Shown here piece after piece: positions 35,240-63,698 of a stretch of DNA of 64,000 nucleotides. The notes beneath the pieces were generated by a model. It saw nothing but the letters and a program-made list of their open reading frames with translations. It searched no databases and was not told the DNA's origin. The position numbers and the translations under genes are program-made. Each line of letters opens with the position of its first letter. Position 1 is the stretch's first letter. Where the stretch lies: positions 1-64,000 of IMG/VR virus record IMGVR_UViG_3300025121_000282. One strand, written 5' to 3'.

Positions 35240-35250
35240 TTGGAGGTCAC

Positions 35251-36036: not shown

Positions 36037-36061
36037 TCTTAATCAGTAGAGGTAAAAGAAA

Positions 36062-36937: not shown

Positions 36938-36971
36938 TCTCAGCGGTCTTCCAGACCGTTTTTCGTTCATA

Positions 36972-37315: not shown

Positions 37316-40189
37316 ATGACTGATTACCAACAATTGTTAATTGCTGCAGGCATTACTCCGGGTACTATCCATGAACTGTACCTAAAGCACACAGATGTGG
37401 AATTGGCAGCCCAGGCTTCTGTGTTTGACCAGATAGTCCCGGAACATGTGGTGGCTTATTGGCGTAAAAAATGGGGCGTGAAGACTCTAACCTTTCGTCA
37501 GCGTAGAGACCTGGGCAAAGGTATACCAGACATTTCTGGACTCACTAAAGAGAAGTTTCTGGAGTTACATACCAATTTTGGAGACACTCAAATTGCCAAA
37601 ATTTATAACATCAGTAAACAGGGTATAGCCAAGCTTAGACAGCGATATGGCATTGCAGCCGTCAGTTATGAGAAGAGAATTAACCCAACAGACGAACTTA
37701 CTGATTTTCAGAAAGCCGTAATTATTGGAACATCTTTGGGAGATGGCCACATTACTGCGTCAGGATGTTTAAAGTTAGATCACTCTGCGGCTCAAATGAA
37801 TTACATCAAATTCAAACACGGTGTAGTTGCAAATATTTCTAAACGATTGCAATACTTTGAAGGAGATAGATTTAGAGAATACTTGACTTATGGGTTCACT
37901 TTCGTGACCTCTCCACACTCATGGGTAAAGGAGCTTCGTTCTATTTTGTACCCAGATGGAATCAAAGTTTTTCCATTGGATGTAATTGCTAGTTTGAAGC
38001 CTGTCTCTTTAGCTATGTGGTATTTTGACGATGGTCACTATGAAGACTATCCTAGTATTGCGATGGGACTGGCTACTTTGACTGATGTAGACAACGCTAT
38101 TGTTGGATTAGACACAGCCTTTGGTCTTAAAACGTATCTTTCTCCACGATCTTTACCCAATTGCCATGTTCTTCAGTTCAGAGCAGAGTCTAGTGATAGA
38201 CTATTTGAGTTAGTAGCTGAGTTTGCTACTCCAGATGTTGCCCACAAGATCCCTAAAAAATTTTGGCCTATTAAAATCGACTTACCTAAATACAAGGTTA
38301 CCAGAGAGGAGCTTCAGGTATCTAATGACCTGCAGAAGAAGTCTAAGTCTTGGCTCACAATGACTGAGGCAGAACAAGCAGAGCACACAAATAACGTTTT
38401 TCTTGGGTGGAGAGAAGTTGGTTTTCCTTTTCAGACTCCTAAATCAGAAGAGCTTCAAACCATCGTTGGTTTAGAAGACTATCAGATTTTAGACGAAGAT
38501 ACGATCAAAGCTTGCCAAGTTGGGCAAAGTATATGTCAAGCTTTCATGCCCCACATTTGGGGTCAAAAACCCATTGATTCTACTTACTCTATTAAAGAGA
38601 TTTTTGATGATGATCACATGTTTAAAACCGTTATTGTCAAATCTTTAAATGAAAAGAAGTCTGTTACAGCTGGTGCAATTAGAAGTTCTTTGCGTTCATA
38701 TCGCCGTTCAGGCTTATACAATTTTCGCCCAGCAGCTGCCCGTGTGTTGGTAGATAAGTATTGCGTTTCTGGCGGTACTGTATTTGACCCCTGTGCAGGG
38801 TGGGGTGGCAGACTTTTAGGTGTATTGCTATCTGAACAGAGGGTCAATTATGTGGCCTGTGAGCCTAGCTCTGCTACTTTTAATGGTTTAAATGAACTGA
38901 CCAATTGGTTGCAAGAGCACGGGGTAAATGCCAACAATCGCGTTCATTTGCACAACACCCCAATAGAGGACTTCATAGTTCCGGATGGCATAGACCTTAT
39001 TCTGACCTCCCCTCCATACTGGAAAAAAGAAATTTATTCAGACGAACCAACCCAATCTAGTATTAGGTATACTACTTATTCTGACTGGTTGGATCGATTT
39101 TTGAAACCGTTGATTGAGAATTCTTGGAAGAAACTCAATGCTGGTGGCCACATGATTTTGAATGTAGACGATTTTAATTTAAATAAGGAAACTTACAACT
39201 TAGTAGAGGATACTCAACGAATTGCGACTCAAGTTGGGTGCGGCTCTCCAATATCAATTTTTAAATATGACATGGCTTCTTATGGTGTAGAAAATTTTGA
39301 GTCGGTTTTAATATGGCAGAAAGAATCTGGGGTTGTACTTCCATTCCATACTAGACCTAAAGTCAAGTGTCAGCACTGTGGTGGTGATTTTGAAGCTAGA
39401 GCCGGCAAACAATTTTGCTCTACTTTGTGTCGAGTAAAAGGACATCGTCATAATTCTAAATTGCAATCTGACACAGCCAAATTTTGGGCATTGGACGAGT
39501 ATACCCGTTCTATTACAGATAAGTGTAGGTCTTGTGGATTTTATAAACTAAAATCTAATCTTTTGGGTCATGTATGTTCTGACTGTTCTGTTTTACCTCA
39601 TAACCCCAAGAAAATTTGCAAATTTTGTTCAAACCCGTTTCAAGCCGAAAATCTTACTCATCAATACTGTACTGAAGCCTGTTATAAAAAATACCGCAGA
39701 CGTGAATATCGAAAAACAGTTCCTGCTAAAACAACTCGCACAGCCAAATGTCAAATTTGTGAGAACGAATGGGAAGTCCCAGCAACAGGTGGGTGGCCTA
39801 CTAAATGTGATCAGTGTAAGAATCAATCTGATTTAGACGATCGGAAACGAGTTTGTCAGTATAGACATTGCAACACTGAATTTGTAGACACCTCTAAGTT
39901 TCAGGGTATGCATTTTTGTTCACCTGAACATCGAGGTGCCGAAAAACGCATACGTTCAGGTGCAACTGCTGATGTGCCCCCTAAGGATCTCGTTATTGGT
40001 CGTCAACGCAGTAAATGTATGCTGTGTAAACAGCCATTTCTGCTTAATGGAACTAAAAATACTCGTTGTGATGATTGTAAGGTAAAGACCAGAACTAAAC
40101 AGTGTTTGCGGTGTAGCAATCCTTTTATTGATGACAGTGCAAATAACACGTGCAAATTTTGTATTGTTTGCACTAAAATTTCACGTTAA
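37316..40189 (+). CDS. HTH + LAGLIDADG endonuclease + amino-DNA methyltransferase + multiple zinc-finger fusion
   Basis: HTH 'DTQIAKIYNISKQGIAKLR'; LAGLIDADG motifs 'IIGTSLGDG' and 'AMWYFDDG'; MTase 'FDPCAGWGGR' and 'LTSPPY'; about seven CxxC...C(x)xxC motifs at the C-terminus. Confidence 0.85.
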   Translation: MTDYQQLLIAAGITPGTIHELYLKHTDVELAAQASVFDQIVPEHVVAYWRKKWGVKTLTFRQRRDLGKGIPDISGLTKEKFLELHTNFGDTQIAKIYNISKQGIAKLRQRYGIAAVSYEKRINPTDELTDFQKAVIIGTSLGDGHITASGCLKLDHSAAQMNYIKFKHGVVANISKRLQYFEGDRFREYLTYGFTFVTSPHSWVKELRSILYPDGIKVFPLDVIASLKPVSLAMWYFDDGHYEDYPSIAMGLATLTDVDNAIVGLDTAFGLKTYLSPRSLPNCHVLQFRAESSDRLFELVAEFATPDVAHKIPKKFWPIKIDLPKYKVTREELQVSNDLQKKSKSWLTMTEAEQAEHTNNVFLGWREVGFPFQTPKSEELQTIVGLEDYQILDEDTIKACQVGQSICQAFMPHIWGQKPIDSTYSIKEIFDDDHMFKTVIVKSLNEKKSVTAGAIRSSLRSYRRSGLYNFRPAAARVLVDKYCVSGGTVFDPCAGWGGRLLGVLLSEQRVNYVACEPSSATFNGLNELTNWLQEHGVNANNRVHLHNTPIEDFIVPDGIDLILTSPPYWKKEIYSDEPTQSSIRYTTYSDWLDRFLKPLIENSWKKLNAGGHMILNVDDFNLNKETYNLVEDTQRIATQVGCGSPISIFKYDMASYGVENFESVLIWQKESGVVLPFHTRPKVKCQHCGGDFEARAGKQFCSTLCRVKGHRHNSKLQSDTAKFWALDEYTRSITDKCRSCGFYKLKSNLLGHVCSDCSVLPHNPKKICKFCSNPFQAENLTHQYCTEACYKKYRRREYRKTVPAKTTRTAKCQICENEWEVPATGGWPTKCDQCKNQSDLDDRKRVCQYRHCNTEFVDTSKFQGMHFCSPEHRGAEKRIRSGATADVPPKDLVIGRQRSKCMLCKQPFLLNGTKNTRCDDCKVKTRTKQCLRCSNPFIDDSANNTCKFCIVCTKISR

Positions 40190-45575: not shown

Positions 45576-48407
45576 ATGTCCGAAGGAATCAATAAAATAC
45601 TACGCAGTTTGCTTGTACTTAATGACAAGCCCGACCAAGAGAATGCAGCTAGGAATTTTGAACAGGTTTTAGTATATAGAATAGACTTTACTGAAGATGA
45701 AGAGAAAGAGATCTTTAATAAAATAAAGAACCACTTTTCTACCTATAGAGAAACCCCTACTATTCAAGACTTGCGTGATGCATTTGAGTTAGAAAAGAAT
45801 CCTGGGGCCATTTTAGTTTTAGATGAAATTTCGAAAGAACCTTGTTACGTCCGCAGTTCTTTTGAAGCTTTGGTTATGGGAGAACTGGAGAAGCAAAGAA
45901 TAGCCAAAATCCATATTTTGGCCAAAGAGTCAGCGCACATAGCATCACATGGCTTAAAAATAGGCAAAGTAGAGCTAAAGGGAGTCAATGATGCCATTCG
46001 TCATTTCACCGGTGGAGCCGACTCTCTACTTGTGATGAATAACGGCGTCAGATTGTCTGGCGATGTGACCCAGGACCATGACGACTTTATAGAAGAAGTT
46101 GAGTACACCCACTCGCACCCAGAAGAAGCTTATGGGTGCCTTACTGGTATAATCCAGGTTGATGAAGGGTGTATGGGGGTAAAACCCTCTGAATTCTGGG
46201 CACACGCTGCATACAGCGGGGGGTTGAAATGTATTAGTGGGGGGTCACGTATTTTTGATAGCAGAGTAGGCATTTTACGTGAAGCCCGAGATGTATACCA
46301 GAATGGTGCCGTAGGTCTGTACACCCACTCATTAAACCACGCCACTGGACAAATCGAATTGGCTGGCGTTAGCCACATACAAGAAAACGGAGTTCGACCT
46401 GTATTTGTACTTGAAAGCTCTCAAGGCCGACAGACAGGGGTCTCAGACAACCACCCATTTCTTACACCTAATGGGTACGTAGAACTTAAGGACCTTAAGA
46501 TTGGAGATTGGATTGCAGTTCCATCTCGTCTTCCAATCCCACTCAGTGCAACCAATCAATTTACTGATGCTCATGCAAAATTGATTGGCTATATGCTGGG
46601 GGGCGGATACATGAACAAAGGTCTGACTTTTGTTACTGTGTCTGACGCCATTAGAACAGATTTTATTGAGCAACTGGTTACTATGGGGTATGTAGAAGGA
46701 AAAGCTACCCCATTACACCCACATTTTCGGTCCACATTTCCCAAAACTAGAGTGCCCACATTACGTATGGGCCATTCTGCTCGTAGTACTAAACGTTATT
46801 GTGCTTCCCCATTGTTACTGTTATTACAATCTTTGGGGCTAATGGGTAAAATTGCGTCCACCAAATTTATTCCAAATCAGCTGTGGTCTATGTCGGATCA
46901 TCAGTTAAAATTACTGGTTGGGGCCATGTGGTCCACTGATGGCCACCTCTCTGTGTGGCGCAATGGTAAGGGTAAAAGGGTACCATCAGTCAAAATTAAG
47001 TACACCACCAAAAGTAGACAACTGGGGGCAGATTTACAATTAGTCTTGCAACGTTTGGGGATTCGTACCTCGTTGGACCGGCACTGGGTTAAATACAAAG
47101 GAGAACGAAGACTGTATTGGACAATAGCAGTTATAGGCCATTCGGCTAAATTCAAATTCTTAACAGACATTGTGGTGATTGGCAAGACTGAAGCTTGTCG
47201 TCTTGCTATTGAAGCGCTTGAGACCCAGCGTGATACATGTGATGACCACATACCTCTGTCTGTATTTAAGAATGTCAAGATTCCACTTCGGGCTGTAAAC
47301 AAAACAGGCAAGACCCCTGTTTACATTGGTTCTATAACCAAGAAGCAAAAAAAAGTGTCTAGAACTGTGGCACTACAATTTGCTTCTGTGCTGAATGACC
47401 CTAGTATCAATACACTGTTGAGTGACCATTTAAACTGGGAACAGGTCCGCTCGATAGTGTGTACTGGTGAGGAGATGACATATGACCTGTCTGTGCCGTC
47501 TAACGAGAACTTTGTTGTAGACGGCTTTGTTACCCACAACACTACTTTTGCTTTAAACTGGGCATACTTTACTGCTGTGTTTCTTAGGAAGAATGCTGAG
47601 TATTTTAGCCTGGAAATGCCATACAAACAGGTTAGACGCATACTAAAGGTGATGCATTCTACTCATTGGAAGTTTACTGATGCACCTTCTGAGGGTGGTC
47701 TCGGGTGGGAACCACTAGAATATAAGAAAGTGCGAGATGGCAAACTAACCCCAATTGAGTTAGAGCGCCTTAAGTACATATCCAAGGACCTTTCAAATCA
47801 AGAGTTACATGGGGCAATACACGTAGTCAAACCCGACCGTGAAGTAACTATAGCAGACCTTAGATTTGTAGCCGAGGCCCAGCATAAGAAGACACCTCTC
47901 TCTGTTATATTTATAGACTACTTGCAATTAGTACAGTCTTCGGATAAGTCTTTAAGGTCAACTACAGAACGGCAAAATGAAGTAGCCCGCGCAGGTAAGC
48001 ACCTCGCCATGAATTTCAATGGTGGTGCAGGGATAGCGGTGATAGGCCTGTGGCAGATCAATAACGAAGGCTACAAACACGCCCAGAAGAAAATGGAAGC
48101 TAAGGAAGAAAAGAAAGGTGGTGTATACGATTTGTCTCACCTTTCTTGGGCAAACGAACTAAAGAATGCCGCCGATTATGTTACATACACCTATGTTGAT
48201 GATGACCTTCGTGCTACAAACGAGGCCATTATAGGCAATATGAAAAACAGAGATAATAGCATCTTTTCTGAAGCTAGAATGAGAGTTGAATGGGGGCAAC
48301 GTAAGTTGGAGTCCCTAATGATCAACTCACCCCTATCTGCCAACAAATCATTTGAAACAGCAGGCGTGAAGGACTTAGACATCGATGTCCTCCTCGGCGG
48401 TCCTTAA
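45576..48407 (+). CDS. dnaB: DnaB-like replicative helicase containing an intein
   Basis: Walker A 'AYSGGLK|TT' interrupted by an intein, 'YFSLEM', 'IFIDYLQL', 'WQIN' and 'MKNRD'. Confidence 0.92.
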   Translation: MSEGINKILRSLLVLNDKPDQENAARNFEQVLVYRIDFTEDEEKEIFNKIKNHFSTYRETPTIQDLRDAFELEKNPGAILVLDEISKEPCYVRSSFEALVMGELEKQRIAKIHILAKESAHIASHGLKIGKVELKGVNDAIRHFTGGADSLLVMNNGVRLSGDVTQDHDDFIEEVEYTHSHPEEAYGCLTGIIQVDEGCMGVKPSEFWAHAAYSGGLKCISGGSRIFDSRVGILREARDVYQNGAVGLYTHSLNHATGQIELAGVSHIQENGVRPVFVLESSQGRQTGVSDNHPFLTPNGYVELKDLKIGDWIAVPSRLPIPLSATNQFTDAHAKLIGYMLGGGYMNKGLTFVTVSDAIRTDFIEQLVTMGYVEGKATPLHPHFRSTFPKTRVPTLRMGHSARSTKRYCASPLLLLLQSLGLMGKIASTKFIPNQLWSMSDHQLKLLVGAMWSTDGHLSVWRNGKGKRVPSVKIKYTTKSRQLGADLQLVLQRLGIRTSLDRHWVKYKGERRLYWTIAVIGHSAKFKFLTDIVVIGKTEACRLAIEALETQRDTCDDHIPLSVFKNVKIPLRAVNKTGKTPVYIGSITKKQKKVSRTVALQFASVLNDPSINTLLSDHLNWEQVRSIVCTGEEMTYDLSVPSNENFVVDGFVTHNTTFALNWAYFTAVFLRKNAEYFSLEMPYKQVRRILKVMHSTHWKFTDAPSEGGLGWEPLEYKKVRDGKLTPIELERLKYISKDLSNQELHGAIHVVKPDREVTIADLRFVAEAQHKKTPLSVIFIDYLQLVQSSDKSLRSTTERQNEVARAGKHLAMNFNGGAGIAVIGLWQINNEGYKHAQKKMEAKEEKKGGVYDLSHLSWANELKNAADYVTYTYVDDDLRATNEAIIGNMKNRDNSIFSEARMRVEWGQRKLESLMINSPLSANKSFETAGVKDLDIDVLLGGP
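46230..47540 (+). mobile_element. intein (437 aa) with LAGLIDADG-type endonuclease in DnaB
   Basis: Starts CISGGS; block B 'VSDNHP'; motifs 'LIGYMLGGG' (degenerate) and 'AMWSTDG'; ends 'GFVTHN' followed by Thr. Confidence 0.95.
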
Positions 48408-49574: not shown

Positions 49575-52352
49575 ATGGACATGTTTTCTTTGTCTCGCGC
49601 TATAGCGCGTCCCGACTGGTTGGACGAATGCAAAACCAGGGTGGTCGGGTCATTACAGGAACTGTCGGATTTGGTGGACGAGGTCTTATCTCAACCTAAG
49701 CCTTGTGTTGCCTCAGACATAGAGACCACGGGTCTGGACGCCAGGGTATACAGAGCAGACCAGCTTGACATAATAGAAAAAATACGTAGAGAGAAGCCCA
49801 TCCAATATAGAGAGTGGTCTCCTAGTGAAATAGAATGGGTACACAAAGTAGGGCACACCACTATAGATAAAGTTTGTGGCATTGGTTTATCACCGAATGG
49901 CATACGGGGGTACTATATACCCCTGCGTCACAGACCTTGGGATGCAAATTGCTCCAACTTGCCAATTCCACAGACTGTGGAAATACTAAAAAAGTTGTAC
50001 GCCAACGCTACCATTGTAGAACACCACTCTAAATATGATAATGAGGTTATGGAGTATGACCTAGGTATACCCATGTCTGGTATCAGTTTGCACGATACCA
50101 TGATAAAACATTATGTTCTAAATTCCAACGCTAAACGCCATGGTCTTAAGGGACTGGCTAAAGATTTGTTGGACATGTCGATGATTGAGTTGGAAGACTT
50201 ATTTCCTCATGCTGTAGGAAAAGGGAAGAAAGAACGGGTAGAAGTTCAAAATCTTTTCCCTGAAGAGATTGAAGAGTACGGGTGCAGTGACGTCATTGTT
50301 ACATACCGCTTGGATAAATTTTTAGACTACCACTGCTGGATTAAGAGGGGCACACGGATAGATCAGCACTCTCATTTTTCGCACCCAAACGGCTCCATGC
50401 GGGTTAAAGAGGTAGACAGCTTTAAAAATTTGGTTCAGTCTTTAGAAAATCCTATTAATAATGAAAAGCAGCACGGGGAGTGGGTCAATCTCTTTGTTTT
50501 CCAGAGAGACCTGCTGTCAATAGAACACAGACTGGTAGACGCCATTAGAGATACTGAGAGGCGCAGAGTCAAACTTAACATACCTATGTTGGAGCAAAAC
50601 AAGGCCAACATAATTGTAAAACTTGCTAAGATTGAACGAGAAATTCTTTCTGAATTAGGGGAAAAGGCTCTGGTCCGTATAGAGTCAGAACCTAACCCGT
50701 GGTATTGCAGTTTGAGGTCTGCTAGGGACCTGTCTGTTTTAATATACCATAACTTGGGTTTTAAACCCCTGGAAAACTTTGCAGGAACAACGGGCCCAGG
50801 AGCGGGGAATAAGGCAGCAGTGGACGCCACTGCTTCTACGGATGCTGCAATTCTGGCCGACTTGATTAAAGAAAATCCTAAAAATAAAAACATAACAATA
50901 CTGCAAAAAATACTTGACTACAGAGCCTTAGACAAGGCTCTGATGTCTTATTACGAGCCTGTTCTTCAGTCAGTTGATCCCAATGGGGAGGCCAGAATAT
51001 CGTATAGCCCCTGGTCTGTAGATACCGGTCGTCTCGCTGCAAGGTCAGGTAATTACCTAGTTGATGGATACTCTGAAGTACAGTGGCACGCCATCCCGTC
51101 TCCGGATGAACTCTCTCCTCAAGAAGTGAATGACCTTAAGAGTATGGTCGTCCCTAGAGAGGGGTACATACTCTGTTCTGCCGATTTTAGTGGTGAAGAA
51201 CTGAGGATTGCCGCAAACCTATCTAGAGAAGAGAAATGGATCAAAGAGTTTCTGGAGGGTACTGGGGATCTACACTCTATTACGGCTAGAATTCTATACG
51301 ACCTGGGTGACAATGGCACACCTACCAAGTCTCAGAGACAGGCAGGTAAGAGAACCAATTTTGCCAAATTATATGGTGGAGGTGGCCCCGCCATAGCCCG
51401 CGCAGTGGGGGCTGCGGACGCAAGTGAGGGCTGGCGCCTAGCAGGCAAGCTCGAATCCGGTCTCCCAGGAATTGCCGCGTGGCAAAAGCGTCAGGAGAGC
51501 GTGGCGAAGCAGCTTGGATTTGTAGTTACAGCTGCAAAGCGCGTCAGATTAGTTCCGCAGATGTTCCCGGATGTAGCAGACGAGCGTGAGTTCCGCAAGA
51601 TTTACGCGTATGGGGTAAGAACGTCAATCAATACTGTTGTCCAGGGCACCGCAGCAGACATTATCAAGTTGGCTATGTCTCTATTAAGGAATAGATTTAA
51701 AAAAGAAGGTTGGAGTATGGACATTGTGGCTATGTTGCACAACGTTCACGACGAGATACTATTTGAAATCAACCTGAAGTGGCTGCACAAAGTTATCCCT
51801 GTTATCGTTGAGTGTATGGAGATGAAGAATATCCTAATGAAACTGTGGGGGTGGGTTGTCCCACTTGTTATTGAGCCCGCTATCGGCATGGACTGGACTG
51901 CCAAATACAAGTGGGAGTCCATACACAAACCCCCGTGTGAGAACTGCAAGGATGGGATTCCCGCAGAGTCCAAGAAAGATTACGAGTGTGGAAAGTGTGG
52001 CAGGCAGGTAGTTCCAAAAGAGTGGGGGGTCAGCCAAGAGGACATAGATGCAGAAACATCCAAAATAAGTAGCCACGCCACCCTTAAAGTACTACAGCCC
52101 AAAGAGGAACCTCGACCAGTACCTGTTATGCTACAGTCCGGTGTTATTAGATACAAACTGGCAAGCCCGCTGAGTAAACGCACGGCACAGCTATTGTTTA
52201 CTGCTGTGAATGCATCCCAGGGTTCAGAGCCCCTGGTTGTTTATGATTCTGTAGGGAATGTGATTTTTGACGAATCTGAGGGGATTAAGATTGACTACAA
52301 CCTGTTCAAAGAGAACGTAGACAAGCATCATTTGGTTGGTGTGTTGAATTGA
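49575..52352 (+). CDS. polA: family A DNA polymerase with 3'-5' exonuclease, no 5' nuclease
   Basis: ExoI 'SDIETTG', ExoII 'HHSKYD', ExoIII 'YGCSD'; motif A 'ADFSGEELR', motif B 'RQAGKRTNFAKLYG', motif C 'VHDE'. Confidence 0.96.
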   Translation: MDMFSLSRAIARPDWLDECKTRVVGSLQELSDLVDEVLSQPKPCVASDIETTGLDARVYRADQLDIIEKIRREKPIQYREWSPSEIEWVHKVGHTTIDKVCGIGLSPNGIRGYYIPLRHRPWDANCSNLPIPQTVEILKKLYANATIVEHHSKYDNEVMEYDLGIPMSGISLHDTMIKHYVLNSNAKRHGLKGLAKDLLDMSMIELEDLFPHAVGKGKKERVEVQNLFPEEIEEYGCSDVIVTYRLDKFLDYHCWIKRGTRIDQHSHFSHPNGSMRVKEVDSFKNLVQSLENPINNEKQHGEWVNLFVFQRDLLSIEHRLVDAIRDTERRRVKLNIPMLEQNKANIIVKLAKIEREILSELGEKALVRIESEPNPWYCSLRSARDLSVLIYHNLGFKPLENFAGTTGPGAGNKAAVDATASTDAAILADLIKENPKNKNITILQKILDYRALDKALMSYYEPVLQSVDPNGEARISYSPWSVDTGRLAARSGNYLVDGYSEVQWHAIPSPDELSPQEVNDLKSMVVPREGYILCSADFSGEELRIAANLSREEKWIKEFLEGTGDLHSITARILYDLGDNGTPTKSQRQAGKRTNFAKLYGGGGPAIARAVGAADASEGWRLAGKLESGLPGIAAWQKRQESVAKQLGFVVTAAKRVRLVPQMFPDVADEREFRKIYAYGVRTSINTVVQGTAADIIKLAMSLLRNRFKKEGWSMDIVAMLHNVHDEILFEINLKWLHKVIPVIVECMEMKNILMKLWGWVVPLVIEPAIGMDWTAKYKWESIHKPPCENCKDGIPAESKKDYECGKCGRQVVPKEWGVSQEDIDAETSKISSHATLKVLQPKEEPRPVPVMLQSGVIRYKLASPLSKRTAQLLFTAVNASQGSEPLVVYDSVGNVIFDESEGIKIDYNLFKENVDKHHLVGVLN

Positions 52353-54293: not shown

Positions 54294-54749
54294 GTGTCTG
54301 GGTTCAAACGAGACGAGGTTGTAGCCCTTCCTGGGTTCGAATCAACAGACCGCAAAACTTGGCTCAGGCTGAACACAATCATGGCTGACGAAAATCTGAT
54401 GCGACGGTTACACATGGGCCTCCCAGTTGGAAATCTCAAAGACCGCACTCAAGACCTTTATTTTGTAGAAGCCGCTAAGCACTTTGGAATCCCAATCGAA
54501 GAAGTCACCCCAGAACAGCGTCGCCAGATGAAGGATATTCTATTCGGTCAGCTGTATGGTCAATCTGAAGAAGTAAAAGCACTTCGTGCTGAGGCCAAGT
54601 TCATGAATTTTGCCGAAGGCCTCCCTTATGGCATGCCAGACAAACTTGTGGAACAACCATCAGACAAATACAGACTTGCTAGACAGCAGGCAATGGCTAA
54701 CGTGTGGAGAATAGTGTACGGGTTGCCAGACGAGCCCACTGAAGACTAA
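54294..54749 (+). CDS. small protein with PolA fingers/O-helix-like repeats
   Basis: 'DLYFVEAAKHFGIPIEEVTPEQRRQMKDILFGQLYG' matches PolA motif B and its upstream helices; two further degenerate copies follow. Confidence 0.65.
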   Translation: MSGFKRDEVVALPGFESTDRKTWLRLNTIMADENLMRRLHMGLPVGNLKDRTQDLYFVEAAKHFGIPIEEVTPEQRRQMKDILFGQLYGQSEEVKALRAEAKFMNFAEGLPYGMPDKLVEQPSDKYRLARQQAMANVWRIVYGLPDEPTED

Positions 54750-56332: not shown

Positions 56333-56360
56333 GTACTCCATAACTAGTAGTGTGGAGTGT
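56333..56360 (+). promoter_or_regulatory. hairpin overlapping the Shine-Dalgarno sequence of the PARP gene
   Basis: actcca (56335-56340) / tggagt (56353-56358); TATAAT at 56322-56327 just upstream. Confidence 0.4.
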
Positions 56361-57910
56361 CTCAAGTGGGAACTATTGCGCACAATGTCGTCCTCAACTT
56401 CACTGATCTGACTGGCGACAAGACCGGCTGTGTAACACTTGGCTCCAATAAGTTCTGGAAGGGCCACGTGGTTGATCACGGAAATGGTACTGCAGACTTC
56501 GAGTGTAAGTGGGGCCCTACAGGAGAGCCTGGGTCAGACAAAGGTAGCAAGAGGGGGATTTCACTTGCTGAGGCCATCAAGATTCTCAATTCGAAAGTGG
56601 CCGAGAAGGAAAAGAAGGGTTACACCCGCCTTCAGGTACGGGATGATGCTGAAGAGGCCGCCAAGCAGGCAGCGAAGGGCATCGTAGCGGCTGTGGCTCC
56701 TGGCATTGCAGCTGCTCCAGCCCCCAAGCGTATTTTCCACCCTGAGGTGGGTAAGCTTCTCTCCACGATTTATGGAGCTACATCTACAGTAGTTCGAGCC
56801 GGTTTGTCATCTCAGGCGGGTGCTACAGCTAGCAATCCCATCGGAAACCTCTCCGATAGCCAACTGGACATTGGTGGGTCGATCTTGGATGAAATCGGAC
56901 TCGCTCTTGAAGCTGAATTCGGTCGAGAGTCCACCAACAACAAAGCCACCACTTTCCCTCTCGCCAAAGACGGCACTCCCAGTCCGAAAGTGATCGACCT
57001 GACCAATCGATTTATGTCCAATGTTCCAAGGGAAATTGGGCGAGAAATGCGTGGTCGTGAGAATCTTCATCGACTGGTCATCTCAAGTTATGAGCGCCTC
57101 CAGGCTCAGCGTGAATTCCTACAACTGTTGAGAGACGCGCATCTGACGCAAGCAGTCTTTCAGGCAGCAGGAGCACAGACTGCCTCCTCTGACAAAGAGG
57201 CAGTCTGGTACGACGGGTTGAATTGTGCCATCGAGCACTTGGACCCAGCAAGTCCCGAATTCCGCAGGGTGGTCGAGATCTTTAGCACTGGCCAGAGTCA
57301 GAAGAACTCAAACTGGTTTCGTAATGGTCGATCCACTCTGCGAGTGGCTAACGTTTTCAAATACTGCAGAAACGGAACGGAGTCCACTTTTAGTGCCTAC
57401 GCCGACAAGGTAGCCCGAAAGCCTGGAGCAGTTGGCAAAATCATGGCATGGCATGGTACGAAAGCCGAAAACACTATCGGGATATCCAAGCAGGGTCTTT
57501 TGATGCCTGAGAATTTGCCGCGGGGTGTGAGTCAAACTGGCAAAGCCTTTGGAAAAGGGATCTACCACGCCCCTAACTTCCTCGTTGCTGGAGTTAAAAC
57601 GGTTGGTCCTTACCCCACTGATGGTACTAATGGTGCGCTCAAGAGCATGAACTATACCGGCATGTCTGGAGCCGCTTATGGTGGCGGGAATGCCGCGGCA
57701 TACATGTTTCTTCAAGAAGTGGCTTTGGGTAAGGCTGATGTCCATTTCTCAGCTTGTTGGGATAAACACCGCCCCAACGACTTCCCGAACAACGACTTTA
57801 TCTTTGCTTGTGGTGCCAAGAACCAAGGCGGTTTTGTCCACGACGAAATTGTGACATTCGACCAGAACGCACAGAAGTTCGCTTATTTACTTCTCATCAA
57901 GAGTGTCTAG
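56357..57910 (+). CDS. PARP-like ADP-ribosyltransferase with WGR, helical regulatory and catalytic domains (start possibly GTG 56366)
   Basis: WGR-like 'SNKFW...CKWGPTG'; regulatory-like 'IGNLSDSQL' and 'DLTNRFMSNVP'; catalytic H-Y-E triad 'WHGT', 'FGKGIYHA', 'HDEIVTFD'. Confidence 0.9.
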   Translation: MSQVGTIAHNVVLNFTDLTGDKTGCVTLGSNKFWKGHVVDHGNGTADFECKWGPTGEPGSDKGSKRGISLAEAIKILNSKVAEKEKKGYTRLQVRDDAEEAAKQAAKGIVAAVAPGIAAAPAPKRIFHPEVGKLLSTIYGATSTVVRAGLSSQAGATASNPIGNLSDSQLDIGGSILDEIGLALEAEFGRESTNNKATTFPLAKDGTPSPKVIDLTNRFMSNVPREIGREMRGRENLHRLVISSYERLQAQREFLQLLRDAHLTQAVFQAAGAQTASSDKEAVWYDGLNCAIEHLDPASPEFRRVVEIFSTGQSQKNSNWFRNGRSTLRVANVFKYCRNGTESTFSAYADKVARKPGAVGKIMAWHGTKAENTIGISKQGLLMPENLPRGVSQTGKAFGKGIYHAPNFLVAGVKTVGPYPTDGTNGALKSMNYTGMSGAAYGGGNAAAYMFLQEVALGKADVHFSACWDKHRPNDFPNNDFIFACGAKNQGGFVHDEIVTFDQNAQKFAYLLLIKSV

Positions 57911-58001: not shown

Positions 58002-58145
58002 ATGGTCATCATCGTTATCCTGCTCGTCTGCTCTGCCCTCGGCTATGCCATGGCGGGAACCCGCAAGAAGGCCCTTGGAGCAATCCTCGGTTTCTTCCTG
58101 GGACCATTCGGTATCCTGATCGCCGCCATTGCGTGCAAGGACTGA
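58002..58145 (+). CDS. 47-aa two-TM membrane protein (not in ORF track)
   Basis: Translated by hand as MVIIVILLVCSALGYAMAGTRKKALGAILGFFLGPFGILIAAIACKD; GGAG ribosome-binding site upstream. Confidence 0.75.
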   Translation: MVIIVILLVCSALGYAMAGTRKKALGAILGFFLGPFGILIAAIACKD

Positions 58146-58149
58146 TGCC

Positions 58150-58470
58150 ATGAGCACTTATTCAAAATGGCTTCTGACCATCTTGTCCGTGGTTGCCGTG
58201 CTTTCGGGCGCTACCTACTTTCATCGCTATAGGAAAGATCACTGCAAGGAACGACTCAAGGCGCAGGCTAGTGAATTCGCCATAATGAATGAGGGGGAGG
58301 TCCGAGCGTGTTATGGTGATCTCACCACGAGTGCGGCCCTGGATACCCATATCAAATCACTCGGGTTGGCTTCTGGGGCTGAGCTGACCTGGAGTGAGAG
58401 GCATGACGCCTTTGTCGCCATTGCCAAGGGTAGGTTCGCAGACGGCAATACGGGAGGACTGGTCAAATGA
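58150..58470 (+). CDS. N-terminally anchored membrane protein
   Basis: MSTYSKWLLTILSVVAVLSGATYF hydrophobic anchor; in frame with track ORF 58129..58470. Confidence 0.6.
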   Translation: MSTYSKWLLTILSVVAVLSGATYFHRYRKDHCKERLKAQASEFAIMNEGEVRACYGDLTTSAALDTHIKSLGLASGAELTWSERHDAFVAIAKGRFADGNTGGLVK

Positions 58471-58646
58471 ACACCCTCCTGAAACTCGCCATGACCTTTC
58501 TTTTTGCTACGGGCTGTGGTCGAGGCACCACGTGTACGAGTGGTGCAGGCTGCTTCGTCGGGCTGTATTGCACATCTTCGGGGTTCTGCCAGGACAATTC
58601 CGAGAATGCACCAAAGGTCATCTACATTTACAAAGACTGCCGCTGA
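58467..58646 (+). CDS. 59-aa Cys-rich putative lipoprotein (not in ORF track)
   Basis: MNTLLKLAMTFLFATG|CGRGTTCTSGAGCFVGLYCTSSGFCQDN...; lipobox-like Cys and an ATGA overlap. Confidence 0.75.
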   Translation: MNTLLKLAMTFLFATGCGRGTTCTSGAGCFVGLYCTSSGFCQDNSENAPKVIYIYKDCR

Positions 58647-58648
58647 AC

Positions 58649-58870
58649 ATGAATACCCTCCTAATCCTCACCTTCATCCTGGCCTGTGGGTGCTCCCGTC
58701 TGGGAGAGGATTGCTTCAACCATTGGGATTGTGACGACAACCAGAGGTGTTCTTTTTCTGGCACCTGTCGTTTGTCTTGGTATCTGGACAGATGTGTGGA
58801 GAAGAATTCCTGCGCCCATGGGCTGTATTGCTCAGACCCAGGCGTCTGCCTGCGGGAACCGAAGGACTGA
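58649..58870 (+). CDS. 73-aa Cys-rich putative lipoprotein
   Basis: MNTLLILTFILACG|CSRLGEDC..C..C..C plus a second C..C..GLYC..C module. Confidence 0.75.
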   Translation: MNTLLILTFILACGCSRLGEDCFNHWDCDDNQRCSFSGTCRLSWYLDRCVEKNSCAHGLYCSDPGVCLREPKD

Positions 58871-58874
58871 TCCC

Positions 58875-59141
58875 ATGAACACCTTCCTCAAATTCCTTCT
58901 GATCGCGTCCCTCATTGCCCCCAGCGCCGTTCAGGCCAAGCCCTGCGGTCGCGGGTACATCGCGGACAACAAGGTCTGTCACAAGGGTGGTGGATACTAC
59001 CTCCCGGCCCCCGCCCGCAAAGTGCCCAAGACCAAGGGACGTCTTGGTTCTGTGTGTGCCAGCAACTCGGAGTGCAAGAAAGGGCTGTACTGTACCACAT
59101 CGGGTTATTGTCAGGAGAACAACCACAAGGTGGCCAAATGA
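58875..59141 (+). CDS. 88-aa secreted Cys-rich protein
   Basis: Signal peptide ending AVQA, then 'KPCGRGYIADNKVCHKG' and 'CASNSECKKGLYCTTSGYC'. Confidence 0.75.
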   Translation: MNTFLKFLLIASLIAPSAVQAKPCGRGYIADNKVCHKGGGYYLPAPARKVPKTKGRLGSVCASNSECKKGLYCTTSGYCQENNHKVAK

Positions 59142-59473
59142 ACACCCTGAATACCATCCTGACAATAACCCTGGTCACTGCCCTCATCTTGCCCAATGCG
59201 GCCGGCGCCAAGCCATGTGGGGATAGTTACATCTCAGACAACGAGACCTGTCACAAAGGCGGGGGCGGGGATGACAGCACCCCGCCTTCTTGGGGAAGTG
59301 TTATCCTTTGGAGTTCAGTGGTTGTTGGGGGCTTGTTTTTCCTGGCCTGGGCCACGAGTAAAAGCGGCAACCCGTCTCACGGTACAGGTCCTGGCCCAAA
59401 TGTGCAGCGGGGCGACTCGTTCGAGTCCTTTGTACAAGACCTCGGCGGGACTGTCACTATCACTCACAAGTGA
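59138..59473 (+). CDS. 111-aa exported, membrane-anchored Cys-motif protein
   Basis: Signal peptide ending AAGA, 'KPCGDSYISDNETCHKG', then a TM helix. Confidence 0.75.
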   Translation: MNTLNTILTITLVTALILPNAAGAKPCGDSYISDNETCHKGGGGDDSTPPSWGSVILWSSVVVGGLFFLAWATSKSGNPSHGTGPGPNVQRGDSFESFVQDLGGTVTITHK

Positions 59474-59480
59474 GGAGAAA

Positions 59481-59702
59481 ATGGCACATAGACCTAACAG
59501 AACCCTGCAAGACACAGATGACCACATTGTTTCAATTGTGGTCGTGATTGTAGCCGTACTATTCGCACTTGGGGTTGGGGTGTATACAGTCTCATCCAGC
59601 ATCGACTGTGACCGCAAGTGTGCACCCAAGCAGGGTGTATTCGCCCGCCAAATCATGTCTTACCAGTGTGTCTGTGTAGACCCAGAAGACATAAAAGAAT
59701 AG
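59481..59702 (+). CDS. 73-aa single-TM protein with Cys4 C-terminal domain
   Basis: GAGGAG ribosome-binding site, TM 'IVSIVVVIVAVLFALGVGVY', then C..C..CxC. Confidence 0.7.
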   Translation: MAHRPNRTLQDTDDHIVSIVVVIVAVLFALGVGVYTVSSSIDCDRKCAPKQGVFARQIMSYQCVCVDPEDIKE

Positions 59703-60157: not shown

Positions 60158-60592
60158 ATGACCGATAAACTCTCAGATCAACTCCGTTTTGCCATGGCTT
60201 TCTCCCGGAGAGATTTTATAGACAGAGCCCACGAGTACATTGCTGGTGCCATCATAGAGTTTTATAAGGTTAAGCTCGCTAAGAAAAATGGTTTTACTAA
60301 GTGGGTTGTACACTGGGATAACGAGTCTAAGCGGTTGATTGACAGACAACTTGTTCTGCTATTTCTGCACCCCATCCGTGGATTTAAAGACACGAAGTCT
60401 GCGGCTTTGCAGGCGCTTAGTGATATCATGGTTGGCAGCAATGGGTACCAAACTGTCGCCACTAATGATGTAAAGAAGGATTTTAAAGTTCAGGGTCTCC
60501 AGACAGGCCTAGACGAGCAAGACGCCCAAGACTTTAAAAACTGGGTCAGTTTGGCCATTGAGGCTAATCATGACCTGAGGGTCCGAAAATGA
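60158..60592 (+). CDS. KLSxQLRxA-leader protein, tandem paralogue 1
   Basis: MTDKLSDQLRFA; colinear homology to 60589..61008. Confidence 0.8.
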   Translation: MTDKLSDQLRFAMAFSRRDFIDRAHEYIAGAIIEFYKVKLAKKNGFTKWVVHWDNESKRLIDRQLVLLFLHPIRGFKDTKSAALQALSDIMVGSNGYQTVATNDVKKDFKVQGLQTGLDEQDAQDFKNWVSLAIEANHDLRVRK

Positions 60593-61008
60593 CCGATAAA
60601 CTCTCAGACCAACTTCGCTATGCAATGGCTTTCTCCCGTCGCGACTTCATCGACAGAGCCCACGAGTACATCTCAGGTGCTATCAGAGAATTCTATAAAG
60701 CTAAACTGGCCCGTAAAAATGGCCTTACTGAGTGGGTCACCCACTGGGATAACGAGGCAAAGCGTTTGGTAAATGACCAGCTTGCTGCGTTATTCTTGCA
60801 TCCGATTCGAGGTTTTAAAAACAAGAAACAAGCTGCCACTCAGGCATTCGAGGACATCTTTGAAAAAAGTGCGGGGTACCAGAGGATCGCTACTACTACC
60901 GTCAAACGAGACTTTAACGTCACCGGTCTAGTCCACAGCCTCGATGTCAGTGATGCTGATGAGTTTCGAGAGTGGGTATTGTCAGTCATCAGCGAGTCGG
61001 AGGACTAA
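60589..61008 (+). CDS. KLSxQLRxA-leader protein, tandem paralogue 2
   Basis: MTDKLSDQLRYA; shares SRRDFIDRAHEYI, HWDNE and FLHPIRGFK with the upstream gene. Confidence 0.8.
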   Translation: MTDKLSDQLRYAMAFSRRDFIDRAHEYISGAIREFYKAKLARKNGLTEWVTHWDNEAKRLVNDQLAALFLHPIRGFKNKKQAATQAFEDIFEKSAGYQRIATTTVKRDFNVTGLVHSLDVSDADEFREWVLSVISESED

Positions 61009-62720: not shown

Positions 62721-63698
62721 ATGGGTGGTAATTTCTGGAAGCTGGACAGAATGGCACGTGTTGCCTACTTAGACATAGAGGACGACCTGAGGCGATACCT
62801 GGACGAAGCAGCCCCGGGTCAATACAGAATTCCGGAGTATTGTGGGGACAAAGCTACCTTTGGAGACTTGGACGTACTACTGTCCTCGAATGTTTTAGTC
62901 AAAAACCCACAATTTTATGATACCCTGCATCGCGATCTGGGCATCACCCAGTTTGATAGTCTGCACACCGGGCATACCACAGTCTATCGTGGGTTGCAGG
63001 TAGACTTCTTTATTGTGTCTCCCGATAACCTCAAGTCCTCGTATAATTTCATGTCATACGGAGAGTTGGGTAACATTATCGGTAGAATGGTCAAGAGATT
63101 TGACTGTAAGTGGGGTGGAGACGGCCTTACTTTCATCTTCAGATGGGGAGACCATTTCAAGAGAGAAGTTAATCTTACTAAAAACTTCGAAATAGTATGT
63201 GAATGCTTTTGTTTGAACTATGACATTTGGTCTAAGGGGTTCGCAACCCAGAGAGACTCGTTTATTTGGGCCACCAATTCTATGTGGTTCCGGTCTGAAC
63301 CATACTTTAGAGAAGACGGCCCCGTAGCCAACAGAATTAAGACCCGTACAGGCATGATAGACTTTGTAGCCTTCGTCAAGTCAAACTTTGGCCCCAACTC
63401 GGGAGCTAAAACAGACGACCCCATTGGACACTTGGAAAAGTACTTCCCTGGGTCAAACCTAAGAGAGAAAATAAGTAAATTCGAGGCTCAGGTAAAGACC
63501 ATAGAAGCAGTTTCTGCCAAGTTCAATGGCAGATACATCATGGGACTCAGACCGGGACTTGCCGGGAAAGAATTGGGAGACTTTATCAGTAAGTTTAAGG
63601 CATCTAAAGAGAACTTTGAGGAGTGGGTCATAGGGAATGACCAACCCACAATTGATAGTGCCGTACTCGGATTTGTCCCCAATCGGAGCGAATTGTAA
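62721..63698 (+). CDS. DNA polymerase beta-superfamily nucleotidyltransferase
   Basis: 'TFGDLDVLL' (DxD), third acid in 'QVDFF', and X-family-like 'YGELGNIIGRMVK'. Confidence 0.65.
   Translation: MGGNFWKLDRMARVAYLDIEDDLRRYLDEAAPGQYRIPEYCGDKATFGDLDVLLSSNVLVKNPQFYDTLHRDLGITQFDSLHTGHTTVYRGLQVDFFIVSPDNLKSSYNFMSYGELGNIIGRMVKRFDCKWGGDGLTFIFRWGDHFKREVNLTKNFEIVCECFCLNYDIWSKGFATQRDSFIWATNSMWFRSEPYFREDGPVANRIKTRTGMIDFVAFVKSNFGPNSGAKTDDPIGHLEKYFPGSNLREKISKFEAQVKTIEAVSAKFNGRYIMGLRPGLAGKELGDFISKFKASKENFEEWVIGNDQPTIDSAVLGFVPNRSEL

What the first reader, a model, noticed from the sequence alone, without database searches (positions are those of the whole stretch)
58002..59702. Array of tiny exported Cys-rich proteins built by module shuffling
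Seven small membrane or exported genes are tightly coupled, two of them below the ORF-track cutoff. Four consecutive genes start MNT(L/F)L/N (ATGAA[CT]ACC[CT]T) and combine two modules. Module B is C-x5-C-x5-C-x5-C, usually with GLYC; module A is KPCG..YI.DN..CHKGG. The layouts are B (58467), B-B (58649), A-B (58875) and A-TM (59138), with lipobox-like or signal-peptidase-I-like leaders. The region looks GC-richer than the replication genes. Inference: a diversifying set of disulfide-bonded surface mini-proteins for superinfection exclusion, receptor masking or cell-cell interference. The style recalls Cys-rich lipoproteins of myxobacteria-like hosts, which is a weak hint only.
Basis: partly seen in the sequence, partly recalled or inferred. 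Interest (0 to 1): 0.7.

Follow-up and report, generated by a model that had tools for sequence, protein, structure and literature searches.

The report
Phage cassette of tiny envelope proteins
A 315-kb groundwater phage carries a 1.7-kb string of seven tiny, tightly coupled genes for membrane, periplasmic and lipoprotein mini-proteins built from two disulfide-hairpin modules; one module belongs to a large, unnamed family otherwise found in head-packaged phage proteins, and the cassette's job (most likely keeping rival phages out) is untested.

Summary
At 58002-59702, seven small + strand genes follow one another with gaps of -4 to +7 nt. All are predicted envelope proteins: a 2-TM hairpin, an N-anchored protein, two lipoproteins (B, B-B), a secreted A-B protein, a signal-peptide A-TM protein, and a type-II anchored Cys-rich protein. 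Modules A and B and the MNT leader occur nowhere else in the 315-kb genome. DNA repeats show tandem duplication with module swaps.

New here: module A (K-x-C-G-x3-I-x5-C, a predicted beta-hairpin) belongs to an unannotated family. It has 670 representative proteins at E<=1e-3. Most are 300-3000-aa proteins with several copies, encoded between portal, MuF-like protein, protease and capsid genes of other phages. A few are small exported bacterial proteins. Module B is a two-disulfide hairpin whose best solved match is the lectin scytovirin (profile E 0.0011; a lead only).

"Diversifying" is not supported: dN/dS is about 0.25 and five assemblies are 99.9-100% identical. The cassette is accessory, since phages with an orthologous PARP gene lack it.

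Function is untested. The best guess is superinfection exclusion or envelope remodelling (0.4). A holin/spanin-type lysis role for g1-g3 is the main rival (0.2).

The parts
58002..58145 (+). g1: 47-aa inner-membrane hairpin with two hydrophobic helices and a GxxxGFFLGPFGxLI motif
   Evidence: ORF and hydropathy. GGAG lies 9 nt upstream of the start. No family hit. Atlas look-alikes are unnamed ~50-aa proteins (score 0.89); the nearest named cluster is Imm_superinfect at only 0.72. A similar 2-TM protein fused to a SHOCT-like tail sits in the L014 cluster.
58150..58470 (+). g2: 106-aa protein with one N-terminal TM helix (residues 7-23) and a ~80-aa domain with 2 Cys; its stop overlaps the g3 start (ATGA)
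   Evidence: The Rz-like spanin PHROG hit is only E 0.39. The Atlas gave nothing. No relatives in IMG/VR. A 1-bp deletion in the G5 run at 58293 occurs in one assembly.
58467..58646 (+). g3: 59-aa predicted lipoprotein (lipobox FATG|C17) carrying one module B plus an unpaired C58
   Evidence: PS51257-type pattern and Cys positions. B motif at 58533-58589. Called as a gene in four assemblies. No close relatives in IMG/VR.
58649..58870 (+). g4: 73-aa predicted lipoprotein (LACG|C15) carrying two B modules (58712-58768 and 58793-58849)
   Evidence: Its leader is 79% identical in DNA to the g3 leader. GC3 is 0.65. No assembly calls it as a separate gene. No relatives.
58875..59141 (+). g5: 88-aa secreted protein: signal peptide (AVQA|KP), module A (58938-58994), Pro/Lys linker, module B (59055-59111)
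   Evidence: Homologue P0002 is 67% identical over the leader and A, with a different C-terminus. dN/dS is 0.24. AF2 predicts A as a hairpin at residues 28-37, and gives B (residues 61-80) pLDDT 84-86.
59138..59473 (+). g6: 111-aa type-I membrane protein: signal peptide (AGA|KP), module A (59210-59269), Gly linker, TM helix (residues 53-71), conserved 40-aa tail
   Evidence: P0004 is 63% identical over 95% of the length, with dN/dS 0.28. The same architecture occurs in L004:4857-5405, L014:4956-5270 and L036:2786-3232.
59481..59702 (+). g7: 73-aa type-II anchored protein (TM within residues 12-38) with a 35-aa C-terminal domain holding 4 Cys
   Evidence: GGAG lies 7-9 nt upstream. No family hit. 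No relatives.
58137..58177 (+). Repeated gene junction plus leader (AAGGACTGAT.CCATGA.CAC...). Further copies lie at 58450-58490, 58862-58902 and 59131-59170
   Evidence: the repeat finder families D2-D5, 71-94% identity. Alignment of the leaders.
58560..58597 (+). Repeated 3' half of module B (GGGCTGTAyTG...TG.CAGGA). Further copies lie at 58820-58857 and 59082-59119, spaced 260 and 262 nt apart
   Evidence: the repeat finder family D1.
56357..57910 (+). Upstream neighbour: PARP-like gene (WGR, PARP_reg and PARP catalytic domains). It marks the conserved flank of the variable region
   Evidence: Pfam. Orthologues 66% identical sit in L045 and L046, which have a different downstream region.

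Best explanation
The segment is an accessory, moron-like cassette of a huge phage. Its seven translationally coupled genes each place a very small protein in the cell envelope of the infected Gram-negative-type host:
- two bitopic or hairpin inner-membrane proteins (g1, g2);
- two lipoproteins carrying one or two B hairpins (g3, g4);
- one soluble periplasmic A-B protein (g5);
- one inner-membrane protein that shows a single A hairpin to the periplasm and a conserved tail to the cytoplasm (g6);
- one type-II anchored Cys-rich protein (g7).

Shown: the gene structure, the modules, the duplication and shuffling origin, purifying selection on g5 and g6, accessory status, and membership of A in a large phage family.

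Inferred: Sec or Lol export, and disulfide formation (1-3 and 2-4 in B, C-x10-C in A).

Proposed and untested: the cassette is expressed with the neighbouring replication-region genes and changes the envelope so that other phages cannot enter (superinfection exclusion). The B lipoproteins would bind outer-membrane or glycan components from the periplasmic side, as T5 Llp does with FhuA. The exported A units would compete with, or poison, the A-bearing proteins that other phages eject from their heads.
For: Envelope targeting of all seven products and tight coupling.

Modules and leaders are unique to this spot in 315 kb.

DNA repeats at junctions and in B point to tandem duplication.

dN/dS is 0.24-0.29 for g5 and g6 against their homologues.

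The same kind of cluster recurs in other phage contigs with varying content: SP-A-X, SP-A-TM, lipoproteins and small TM proteins (L004/L043, L014). The SP-A-TM gene also occurs alone next to homing endonucleases or a methyltransferase (L011, L036). That is moron-like mobility.

Phages with an orthologous PARP lack the cassette.

The cassette lies in the replication region (SNF2 helicase, DnaB, PolA, PARP), not near the only recognisable peptidoglycan hydrolase (Amidase_2 at 228 kb).

A is a conserved unit of proteins encoded between portal, MuF-like protein, protease and major head protein. An exported copy is therefore a plausible mimic.

Known precedents for small exported or lipoprotein exclusion factors are T5 Llp (PMC9586334) and T4 Spackle (PMC7677548).

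B resembles small binding scaffolds: scytovirin with profile E 0.0011, and knottin-like folds.
Against: No sequence, profile or fold link to any known exclusion protein.

No expression data; no listed RNA run holds the region.

The host is unknown.

The cassette is not adjacent to a receptor-binding protein gene, as llp is in T5.

The g2/g3 arrangement (TM protein whose stop overlaps the start of a lipoprotein gene) is the classic layout of a two-component spanin.

The phage itself has no A-bearing head proteins. A decoy would therefore act only on other phages.

The scytovirin and knottin similarities are not statistically secure.
Confidence: 0.4

Rival explanations
1. Lysis genes. g1 would be a small holin or antiholin, g2 an i-spanin and g3 an o-spanin. 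g4-g7 would be extra lysis-timing or outer-membrane factors. Together they would fuse or disrupt the membranes at the end of infection.
For: g2 has an N-terminal TM helix, and its stop overlaps the start of a lipoprotein gene. That is the 'separated/overlapped' spanin layout (PMC6139136).

Most spanins carry periplasmic cysteines (PMC6139136).

There is a weak Rz-like PHROG hit to the g2 N-terminus (E 0.39).

No canonical lysis cassette was found next to the only amidase.
Against: The PHROG hit is not significant.

Mature g3 has 5 Cys and 1 Pro. Among 526 two-component spanins the maximum for o-spanins was 4 Cys, and the prototype is Pro-rich (PMC6139136).

The periplasmic part of g2 is only ~80 aa.

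No endolysin is nearby; the cassette lies among replication genes.

A second TM-plus-lipoprotein pair of more typical size exists at genome 97855-98663.

The complex prediction gave no answer.

This reading leaves g4-g7 unexplained.
Confidence: 0.2
2. Another envelope-directed role that is neither exclusion nor lysis. Examples are sensing of secondary adsorption (like T4 RI), masking of receptors so that progeny are not lost on debris, or modulation of host envelope stress or Dsb pathways.
For: The same topology evidence applies. The conserved cytoplasmic tail of g6 (GPNVQRG-SFESFVQDLGGTVT, shared with P0004) suggests signalling or partner binding across the inner membrane.
Against: No family link to RI or to other known regulators. 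Nothing favours this reading over exclusion specifically.
Confidence: 0.2
3. Secreted toxin-like or bacteriocin-like peptides used against neighbouring cells.
For: The B region of the g5 model superposes on knottin toxins and inhibitors (TM by target 0.64-0.77). It also superposes on a 49-aa 'bacteriocin-type signal sequence' protein (24 residues, rmsd 0.7, 42% identity). None of these matches is significant.
Against: The leaders are Sec or lipoprotein signals with membrane anchors, not double-glycine export leaders. Lipoproteins and TM-anchored products stay in the producer's envelope. No immunity or transporter genes are nearby.
Confidence: 0.07
4. Virion or ejection components, because module A elsewhere sits in head-packaged proteins.
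For: The A family lies in head-morphogenesis modules of other phages.
Against: g5 and g6 have cleavable Sec signals, which would send them out of the cytoplasm where capsids assemble. They lie among replication genes. They are tiny and lack effector domains.
Confidence: 0.05
5. Some of the short ORFs (especially g4, g1 and g7) are not translated, and the apparent modules are relics of a decayed duplication.
For: Gene finders call g4 alone in none of the assemblies. There are no homologues for g1, g2, g3, g4 or g7. There is no RNA evidence.
Against: All frames are intact in five assemblies. Start spacing and SD motifs are conserved. All Cys positions in four B copies are preserved although the DNA has diverged to 66-74% identity. 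GC3 is elevated in frame.
Confidence: 0.05

Closest known systems
T5 Llp and Cor-type superinfection-exclusion lipoproteins (PMC9586334)
   Same: A small phage-encoded lipoprotein acts from the periplasmic face of the outer membrane. The size class (about 60 aa) matches g3 and g4.
   Different: No sequence or PHROG similarity. llp sits next to the receptor-binding protein gene, whereas this cassette sits among replication genes. Here there are seven proteins built from shuffled Cys-rich modules.
T4 Spackle (periplasmic) and Imm (inner membrane) exclusion proteins (PMC7677548)
   Same: Early-region, tiny, exported or membrane proteins that protect an infected cell at the periplasm and inner-membrane level.
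   Different: No family match. PF14373 was not hit; it appears only as an Atlas neighbour at 0.72. Module composition is different.
Two-component spanins Rz/Rz1 (PMC6139136)
   Same: An N-anchored inner-membrane protein gene is followed, or overlapped, by a small lipoprotein gene. Periplasmic cysteines are present.
   Different: No lysis-cassette context. The would-be o-spanin has 5 Cys and 1 Pro. No significant HMM match.
Polyvalent proteins and MuF-associated head-packaged effectors of phages (PMC5512222, PMC5576092)
   Same: Module A is the same mini-domain that recurs 2-6 times in such large proteins. These carry kinase, LRAT/NlpC-P60 and other domains and are encoded between portal, MuF-like protein, protease and capsid genes.
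   Different: g5 and g6 are tiny, have Sec signals and carry no effector domain. A text search of PMC5512222 for 'transmembrane', 'TM helix', 'cysteines' and 'disulfide' found none of these words. The A motif is not in Pfam.
Scytovirin, hevein-like and knottin-like mini-domains (PDB 2JMV/2QSK; PMC9034974)
   Same: Identical C-x5-C-x5-C-x5-C spacing and a shared C(S/T)SSG(F/Y)CQ stretch. Both scytovirin domains match the B profile (E 0.0011). A predicted disulfide-stapled beta-hairpin is shared.
   Different: The match is borderline. Single sequences score E 0.03-0.45. B has only four Cys. Foldseek matches are not significant. Glycan binding is untested.
TIGR04201 Myxo_Cys_RPT, Pfam EB module, Dickkopf_N
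   Same: Short Cys-rich repeats with G-x-Y-C-like cores, found in exported proteins.
   Different: All scores are below the curated cut-offs: 13.7 against 25, 17.9 against 24.3, and 10.3 against 25.

Membership tests
Two-component spanin (i-spanin plus o-spanin) | The i-spanin has an N-terminal TM domain and the rest lies in the periplasm | tested here: met
   g2 has one hydrophobic helix at residues 7-23. Topology is inferred, not measured.
Two-component spanin (i-spanin plus o-spanin) | An o-spanin gene with a lipobox is embedded in, overlaps or directly follows the i-spanin gene | tested here: met
   The g3 start overlaps the g2 stop (ATGA). A PS51257-type lipobox ends at C17.
Two-component spanin (i-spanin plus o-spanin) | o-spanin composition: few periplasmic Cys (0-4 in 526 cases), and a Pro-rich prototype | tested here: not met
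   Mature g3 has 5 Cys besides the lipidated one, and 1 Pro (PMC6139136).
Two-component spanin (i-spanin plus o-spanin) | Location in a lysis cassette with an endolysin or holin; profile match to spanin families | tested here: not met
   The only hydrolase hit is Amidase_2 at 228157-229152, with no membrane neighbours. phrog_214 scores E 0.39.
Two-component spanin (i-spanin plus o-spanin) | Physical complex between the two periplasmic domains | tested here: inconclusive
   Complex prediction returned 'no answer' (score 0.00, pLDDT 33-40).
Llp/Cor-type exclusion lipoproteins | A small lipoprotein with sequence similarity to Llp or Cor, encoded next to the receptor-binding protein gene | tested here: not met
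   The lipobox is present, but there is no PHROG, Pfam or NCBIfam hit. The neighbours are PARP and replication genes.
Llp/Cor-type exclusion lipoproteins | Binds the phage's outer-membrane receptor and blocks adsorption | not testable with these tools
   Host and receptor are unknown.
T4 Imm family (PF14373) | Profile match of the small 2-TM protein | tested here: not met
   g1 has no PF14373 hit at E<=1. It is only an Atlas neighbour at 0.72.
Module-A family (defined here; no public name found) | K-x-C-G-x3-I-x5-C core with invariant K, C, G, I and C at fixed spacing | tested here: met
   g5 and g6 align without gaps to 56 non-redundant units from about 25 loci. The family was first reached from g5/g6-type sequences alone (L010, E 3e-7). 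The profile finds 670 representative proteins.
Module-A family (defined here; no public name found) | A Gly/Ala-rich hydrophobic helix within about 15-80 residues downstream | tested here: met
   Met by g6 (helix at 53-71). Not met by g5, where B replaces the helix. In the top 150 proteins, 212 of 387 units have such a helix.
Polyvalent / head-packaged effector proteins (PMC5512222) | A large polypeptide with two or more effector domains, encoded in the head-morphogenesis module | tested here: not met
   g5 and g6 are 88 and 111 aa, have Sec signals and no effector domain, and lie in the replication region.
Scytovirin-like lectin domain | Sequence match with the same cysteine spacing in both scytovirin domains | tested here: inconclusive
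   Profile A4 against the PDB gives 2JMV at E 0.0011 and 22.5 bits, with both domains aligned. Single sequences give E 0.032 (g5) and 0.45 (g3), and none for g4. Foldseek places it at rank 15, E 0.94.
Scytovirin-like lectin domain | Oligosaccharide binding | not testable with these tools
   Needs purified protein and glycan arrays or NMR.
TIGR04201 Myxo_Cys_RPT / PF01683 EB / PF04706 Dickkopf_N | Score above the curated cut-off | tested here: not met
   13.7 against 25; 17.9 against 24.3; 10.3 against 25.

The most novel reading that the evidence does not exclude
Module A is a previously unrecognised, widespread hairpin (usually followed by a helix). Head-packaged, ejected phage proteins would use it to dock at, or insert into, the host inner membrane. 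This huge phage and a few others (L004, L011, L014, L036) would have captured the module behind a Sec signal. Exported A (g6 anchored, g5 soluble and fused to a glycan-binder-like B) would then jam the ejection machinery of competing phages. That would be superinfection exclusion by molecular mimicry of the invader's own ejection proteins.
Probability: 0.12. Interest if true: 0.8.

Novelty: new variant of a known kind. Interest (0 to 1): 0.55.

Why it matters
Small phage-encoded envelope proteins decide which phages can share a host, but few are understood, and almost none in huge environmental phages. This cassette shows how such proteins can be generated quickly, by duplicating a leader-plus-junction unit and swapping 20-residue disulfide hairpins.

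More broadly, the work exposes module A as an unnamed family. It has at least 670 representative proteins at 50% clustering. The family links head-packaged polyvalent effectors of many phages, small exported bacterial proteins, and these jumbo-phage mini-proteins.

Defining what A binds would bear on two questions: how ejected phage proteins engage the cell envelope, and how rival phages block that step. Module B offers a minimal four-cysteine scaffold that may bind glycans.

Tried and rejected
Family scans of all seven proteins (Pfam, PHROGs, NCBIfam) gave nothing above cut-off.

Word-indexed searches of 5.8 billion proteins found very little. They returned each protein itself plus P0002 for g5, P0004 for g6 and P0005 for the B alignment.

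Megablast of 12 kb against the phage collection found no match. tblastn of an A-bearing protein (P0148) against cultured phages also found none.

Pattern scans for close relatives of g2, g3, g4 and g7 in IMG/VR found none. The SP-A pattern in 185,579 bacterial genomes found none.

Host inference from the phage GroEL failed. The best hits are about 40% identical and come from unrelated phyla.

Promoter and terminator scans were no better than shuffles. There are no tRNAs in the window.

Metatranscriptomes: no listed RNA run holds the region.

The AF2 model of g5 is only partly confident. AFDB-cluster and PDB fold searches gave no significant match. The A profile against PDB sequences found none.

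The complex prediction for g2 with g3 gave no answer.

I first thought the cassette lay between pieces of a split DNA polymerase. I rejected this because a complete PolA is at 49575-52352; the other hits are short extra fragments.

I considered strain-level diversification and rejected it.

Full report
SOURCE. The window is the first 64 kb of a 314,886-bp IMG/VR virus record that CheckV rates as complete. The same phage appears at 99.93-100% identity in five independent groundwater or soil assemblies. Upstream of the finding lie a SNF2 helicase, an intein-bearing DnaB helicase, a complete family-A DNA polymerase and a PARP-like gene with WGR, PARP_reg and catalytic domains. Long ORFs in this part of the genome run almost entirely on the + strand.

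THE OBSERVATION. Seven genes lie at 58002-59702. Successive gaps are 4, -4, 2, 4, -4 and 7 nt, and Shine-Dalgarno-like motifs precede six of the seven starts. Hydropathy and pattern analysis (inference, since no dedicated predictor was available) gives the following:
- g1 (47 aa): two hydrophobic helices.
- g2 (106 aa): one N-terminal helix and a domain of about 80 aa with two Cys.
- g3 (59 aa): a PS51257-type lipobox ending at C17, then C-x5-C-x5-C-x5-C, plus a lone C58.
- g4 (73 aa): lipobox at C13/C15. C15 leaves an even eight Cys, arranged as two B modules.
- g5 (88 aa): leader AVQA|KP, module A, a Pro/Lys linker and module B.
- g6 (111 aa): leader AGA|KP, module A, GGGG, a TM helix at 53-71 and a 40-aa tail.
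- g7 (73 aa): a charged N-terminus, a TM helix and a 35-aa C-terminal part with four Cys.

In six-frame translation of the entire genome, the strict B pattern, the A pattern and MNT[LF][LN] occur only here. An HMM of A finds only g5 and g6.

ORIGIN BY DUPLICATION AND SHUFFLING. At the DNA level, the junction plus leader (AAGGACTGAT.CCATGAACACC...) recurs at the g2, g3, g5 and g6 starts. The leader recurs at g4, with 71-94% identity. The 3' half of B recurs three times at 260/262-nt spacing. In the protein alignment the lipidated Cys of g3 (ATG-C-GRG) falls on the first Cys of module A in g5 (AKP-C-GRG). The array thus grew by tandem duplication of a unit of about 260 nt, with replacement of the internal module.

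ARE THEY REAL GENES, AND ARE THEY DIVERSIFYING? g5 has one homologue, P0002. It is 67% identical over the leader and A, then continues with an unrelated C-terminus. g6 has P0004, 63% identical over 95% of its length, including the cytoplasmic tail. Nei-Gojobori dN/dS is 0.24-0.29 for these pairs and for the g5/g6 paralogues. That indicates purifying selection. Among five assemblies the array differs by one F-to-L change in the g6 helix and one 1-bp deletion in a G5 run of g2. 'Diversifying' is therefore not supported at either scale. What does vary is gene content between phages. g1, g2, g3, g4 and g7 have no detectable relatives. g4 is called as a gene of its own in none of the assemblies. 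No RNA data set listed holds the region.

MODULE A IS PART OF A LARGE UNNAMED FAMILY. Pattern searches seeded with g5/g6-type sequences reached an IMG/VR contig (L010). There the motif K-K-C-G-x-S-G-I-P-D-N-K-K-C recurs seven times, each time followed by a Gly/Ala-rich hydrophobic helix. A broader alignment then found 19 viral and further metagenomic loci with 1-7 copies per 10 kb. A profile of 58 units has invariant C, G, I and C, with K nearly invariant. It was run against 1.84 billion representative proteins and found 670 at E<=1e-3 and 158 at E<=1e-10.

Among the best 150 proteins the median length is 914 aa and 387 units are present, 2-6 per protein. In 115 proteins the first unit lies within 45 residues of the N-terminus. 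A downstream hydrophobic helix follows 212 of the 387 units. The large carriers contain kinase-like, LRAT/NlpC-P60 and DUF5872 domains. They are encoded between portal, MuF-like minor head protein, head maturation protease and major head protein. That is the signature of head-packaged 'polyvalent' proteins and MuF-associated effectors (PMC5512222, PMC5576092).

No Pfam model covers the motif, and no PDB sequence matches it. A search of PMC5512222 for 'transmembrane', 'TM helix', 'cysteines' and 'disulfide' found none of these words. AF2 with the 58-sequence alignment predicts a beta-hairpin with pLDDT 74-78.

Eight of the 150 are small proteins with Sec-type leaders and two or three A units joined by Ala/Pro-rich linkers. 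One of them lies in an ordinary bacterial chromosomal context.

The architecture of g6 (signal peptide, A, TM) recurs in L004, L011-L013, L014 and L036. These sit next to GIY-YIG-like or Endonuclease_7 genes or a DNA methyltransferase. In L004/L043 and L014 they are accompanied by further lipoproteins and small membrane proteins. The jumbo phage itself has no A-bearing large proteins.

MODULE B. Family scans give only sub-threshold hits: EB module at 17.9 bits, TIGR04201 at 13.7 and Dickkopf_N at 10.3. Atlas neighbours are small bacterial 'dickkopf-related' proteins at 0.79-0.84, which is a lead only. In the AF2 model of g5, B is the confident part (pLDDT 84-86) and forms a hairpin. Foldseek finds knottin-type inhibitors (TM by target 0.64-0.77 over about 27 residues), scytovirin at rank 15 and hevein-like peptides, but none significantly.

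A profile of the B-containing proteins against PDB sequences picks scytovirin (2JMV) at E 0.0011. Both of its domains align, the C-x5-C-x5-C-x5-C spacing is the same, and a C(S/T)SSG(F/Y)CQ stretch is shared. Single sequences give E 0.032 and 0.45. Scytovirin is a two-domain cyanobacterial lectin with five disulfides that binds oligomannose (PMC9034974). I treat glycan binding by B as a lead, not a finding.

ACCESSORY STATUS. The array is 54.4% GC against 47.1% for the genome. That is +1.7 SD and in the top 5.4% of windows. It is similar to the contigs that carry homologues (51-60% GC). Two other huge-phage fragments have a PARP gene 66% identical. Downstream of it they carry an HNH-like gene and different small membrane and lipoprotein genes, and neither A nor g2 is found in the 126-kb and 55-kb records.

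FUNCTION. Nothing links the proteins to a characterised family, so the mechanism is inferred from anatomy and context. All seven products go to the envelope, covering the inner membrane, the periplasm and probably the inner leaflet of the outer membrane. They are co-translated, lie among replication-region genes, and behave as mobile accessory genes. This is the profile of phage exclusion or lytic-conversion functions, such as T5 Llp (PMC9586334) and T4 Spackle and Imm (PMC7677548). I rate it 0.4.

A more specific and more novel version is that exported A mimics the A units of other phages' ejected head proteins and blocks their action. I rate that 0.12.

The main rival is a lysis role for g1-g3. 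A TM protein gene overlapped by a lipoprotein gene is the spanin layout (PMC6139136), and no lysis cassette was found beside the only amidase, at 228 kb. Several points count against this rival:
- The Rz-like hit is E 0.39.
- Mature g3 has 5 Cys and 1 Pro, against a maximum of 4 Cys in 526 o-spanins.
- A second TM-plus-lipoprotein pair exists at 97855-98663.
- g4-g7 would remain unexplained.
- The complex prediction was uninformative.

Other envelope roles, a bacteriocin-like role, a virion role and non-translation are listed with lower weights.

VERDICT. The feature is real. It is a new variant of a known kind, namely phage accessory envelope mini-proteins. Its most interesting aspect is the link of module A to a large, unannotated family of head-packaged phage proteins. 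Function remains untested.

Noticed in passing
window 56357-57910: Phage-encoded PARP-like protein with WGR, PARP regulatory and catalytic domains. Orthologues 66% identical occur in two other huge-phage fragments (L045, L046).
   Followed up: partly
L010/L015, L016, L017, L021 and others (IMG/VR loci); P0007-P0156: Module A (K-x-C-G-x3-I-x5-C, usually followed by a Gly/Ala-rich helix) is a repeated unit of large kinase- or LRAT/NlpC-bearing proteins. These are encoded between portal, MuF-like protein, protease and capsid genes. There are 670 representative proteins at E<=1e-3, and no Pfam or PDB match.
   Followed up: yes
P0088, P0130, P0134, P0138, P0144 (L044:7001-7387); L014:5322-5585: A four-Cys variant of module A (C-x6-C-G-N-S-C-I-x5-C-H) occurs twice in small Sec-exported proteins. 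One of these lies in a bacterial chromosomal context. The variant also occurs once at the C-terminus of a Pro-rich exported phage protein.
   Followed up: partly
window 58293: A 1-bp deletion in a G5 run of g2 in one assembly (L005) truncates g2. It is either a sequencing error or a homopolymer frameshift variant.
   Followed up: no
genome 97855-98663, minus strand (L041): A second adjacent pair: a 100-aa N-anchored protein and a 163-aa lipoprotein (phrog_24725, unknown function). This is an alternative spanin candidate.
   Followed up: partly
window 60158-60592 and 60589-61008: Tandem paralogues 66% identical, with overlapping stop and start and no family hit.
   Followed up: partly
window 45576-48407; 37316-40189: A DnaB-like helicase interrupted by an intein with a LAGLIDADG domain, and a LAGLIDADG_2 endonuclease fused to an N6/N4 DNA methylase.
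   Followed up: no
window 54294-54749 and 62721-63698: Short extra DNA-polymerase-like fragments in addition to the complete PolA at 49575-52352.
   Followed up: no
window 33000-37000: A GC-rich island (52-56.5% GC) with four ORFs of 206-312 aa that have no Pfam hit.
   Followed up: no
genome 228157-229152 (L042): The only recognisable peptidoglycan hydrolase among the four families searched (Amidase_2). Its neighbours look like ThyX, adenylosuccinate lyase and GroEL from their N-terminal sequences; that reading was not tool-tested. No membrane-protein neighbours.
   Followed up: partly
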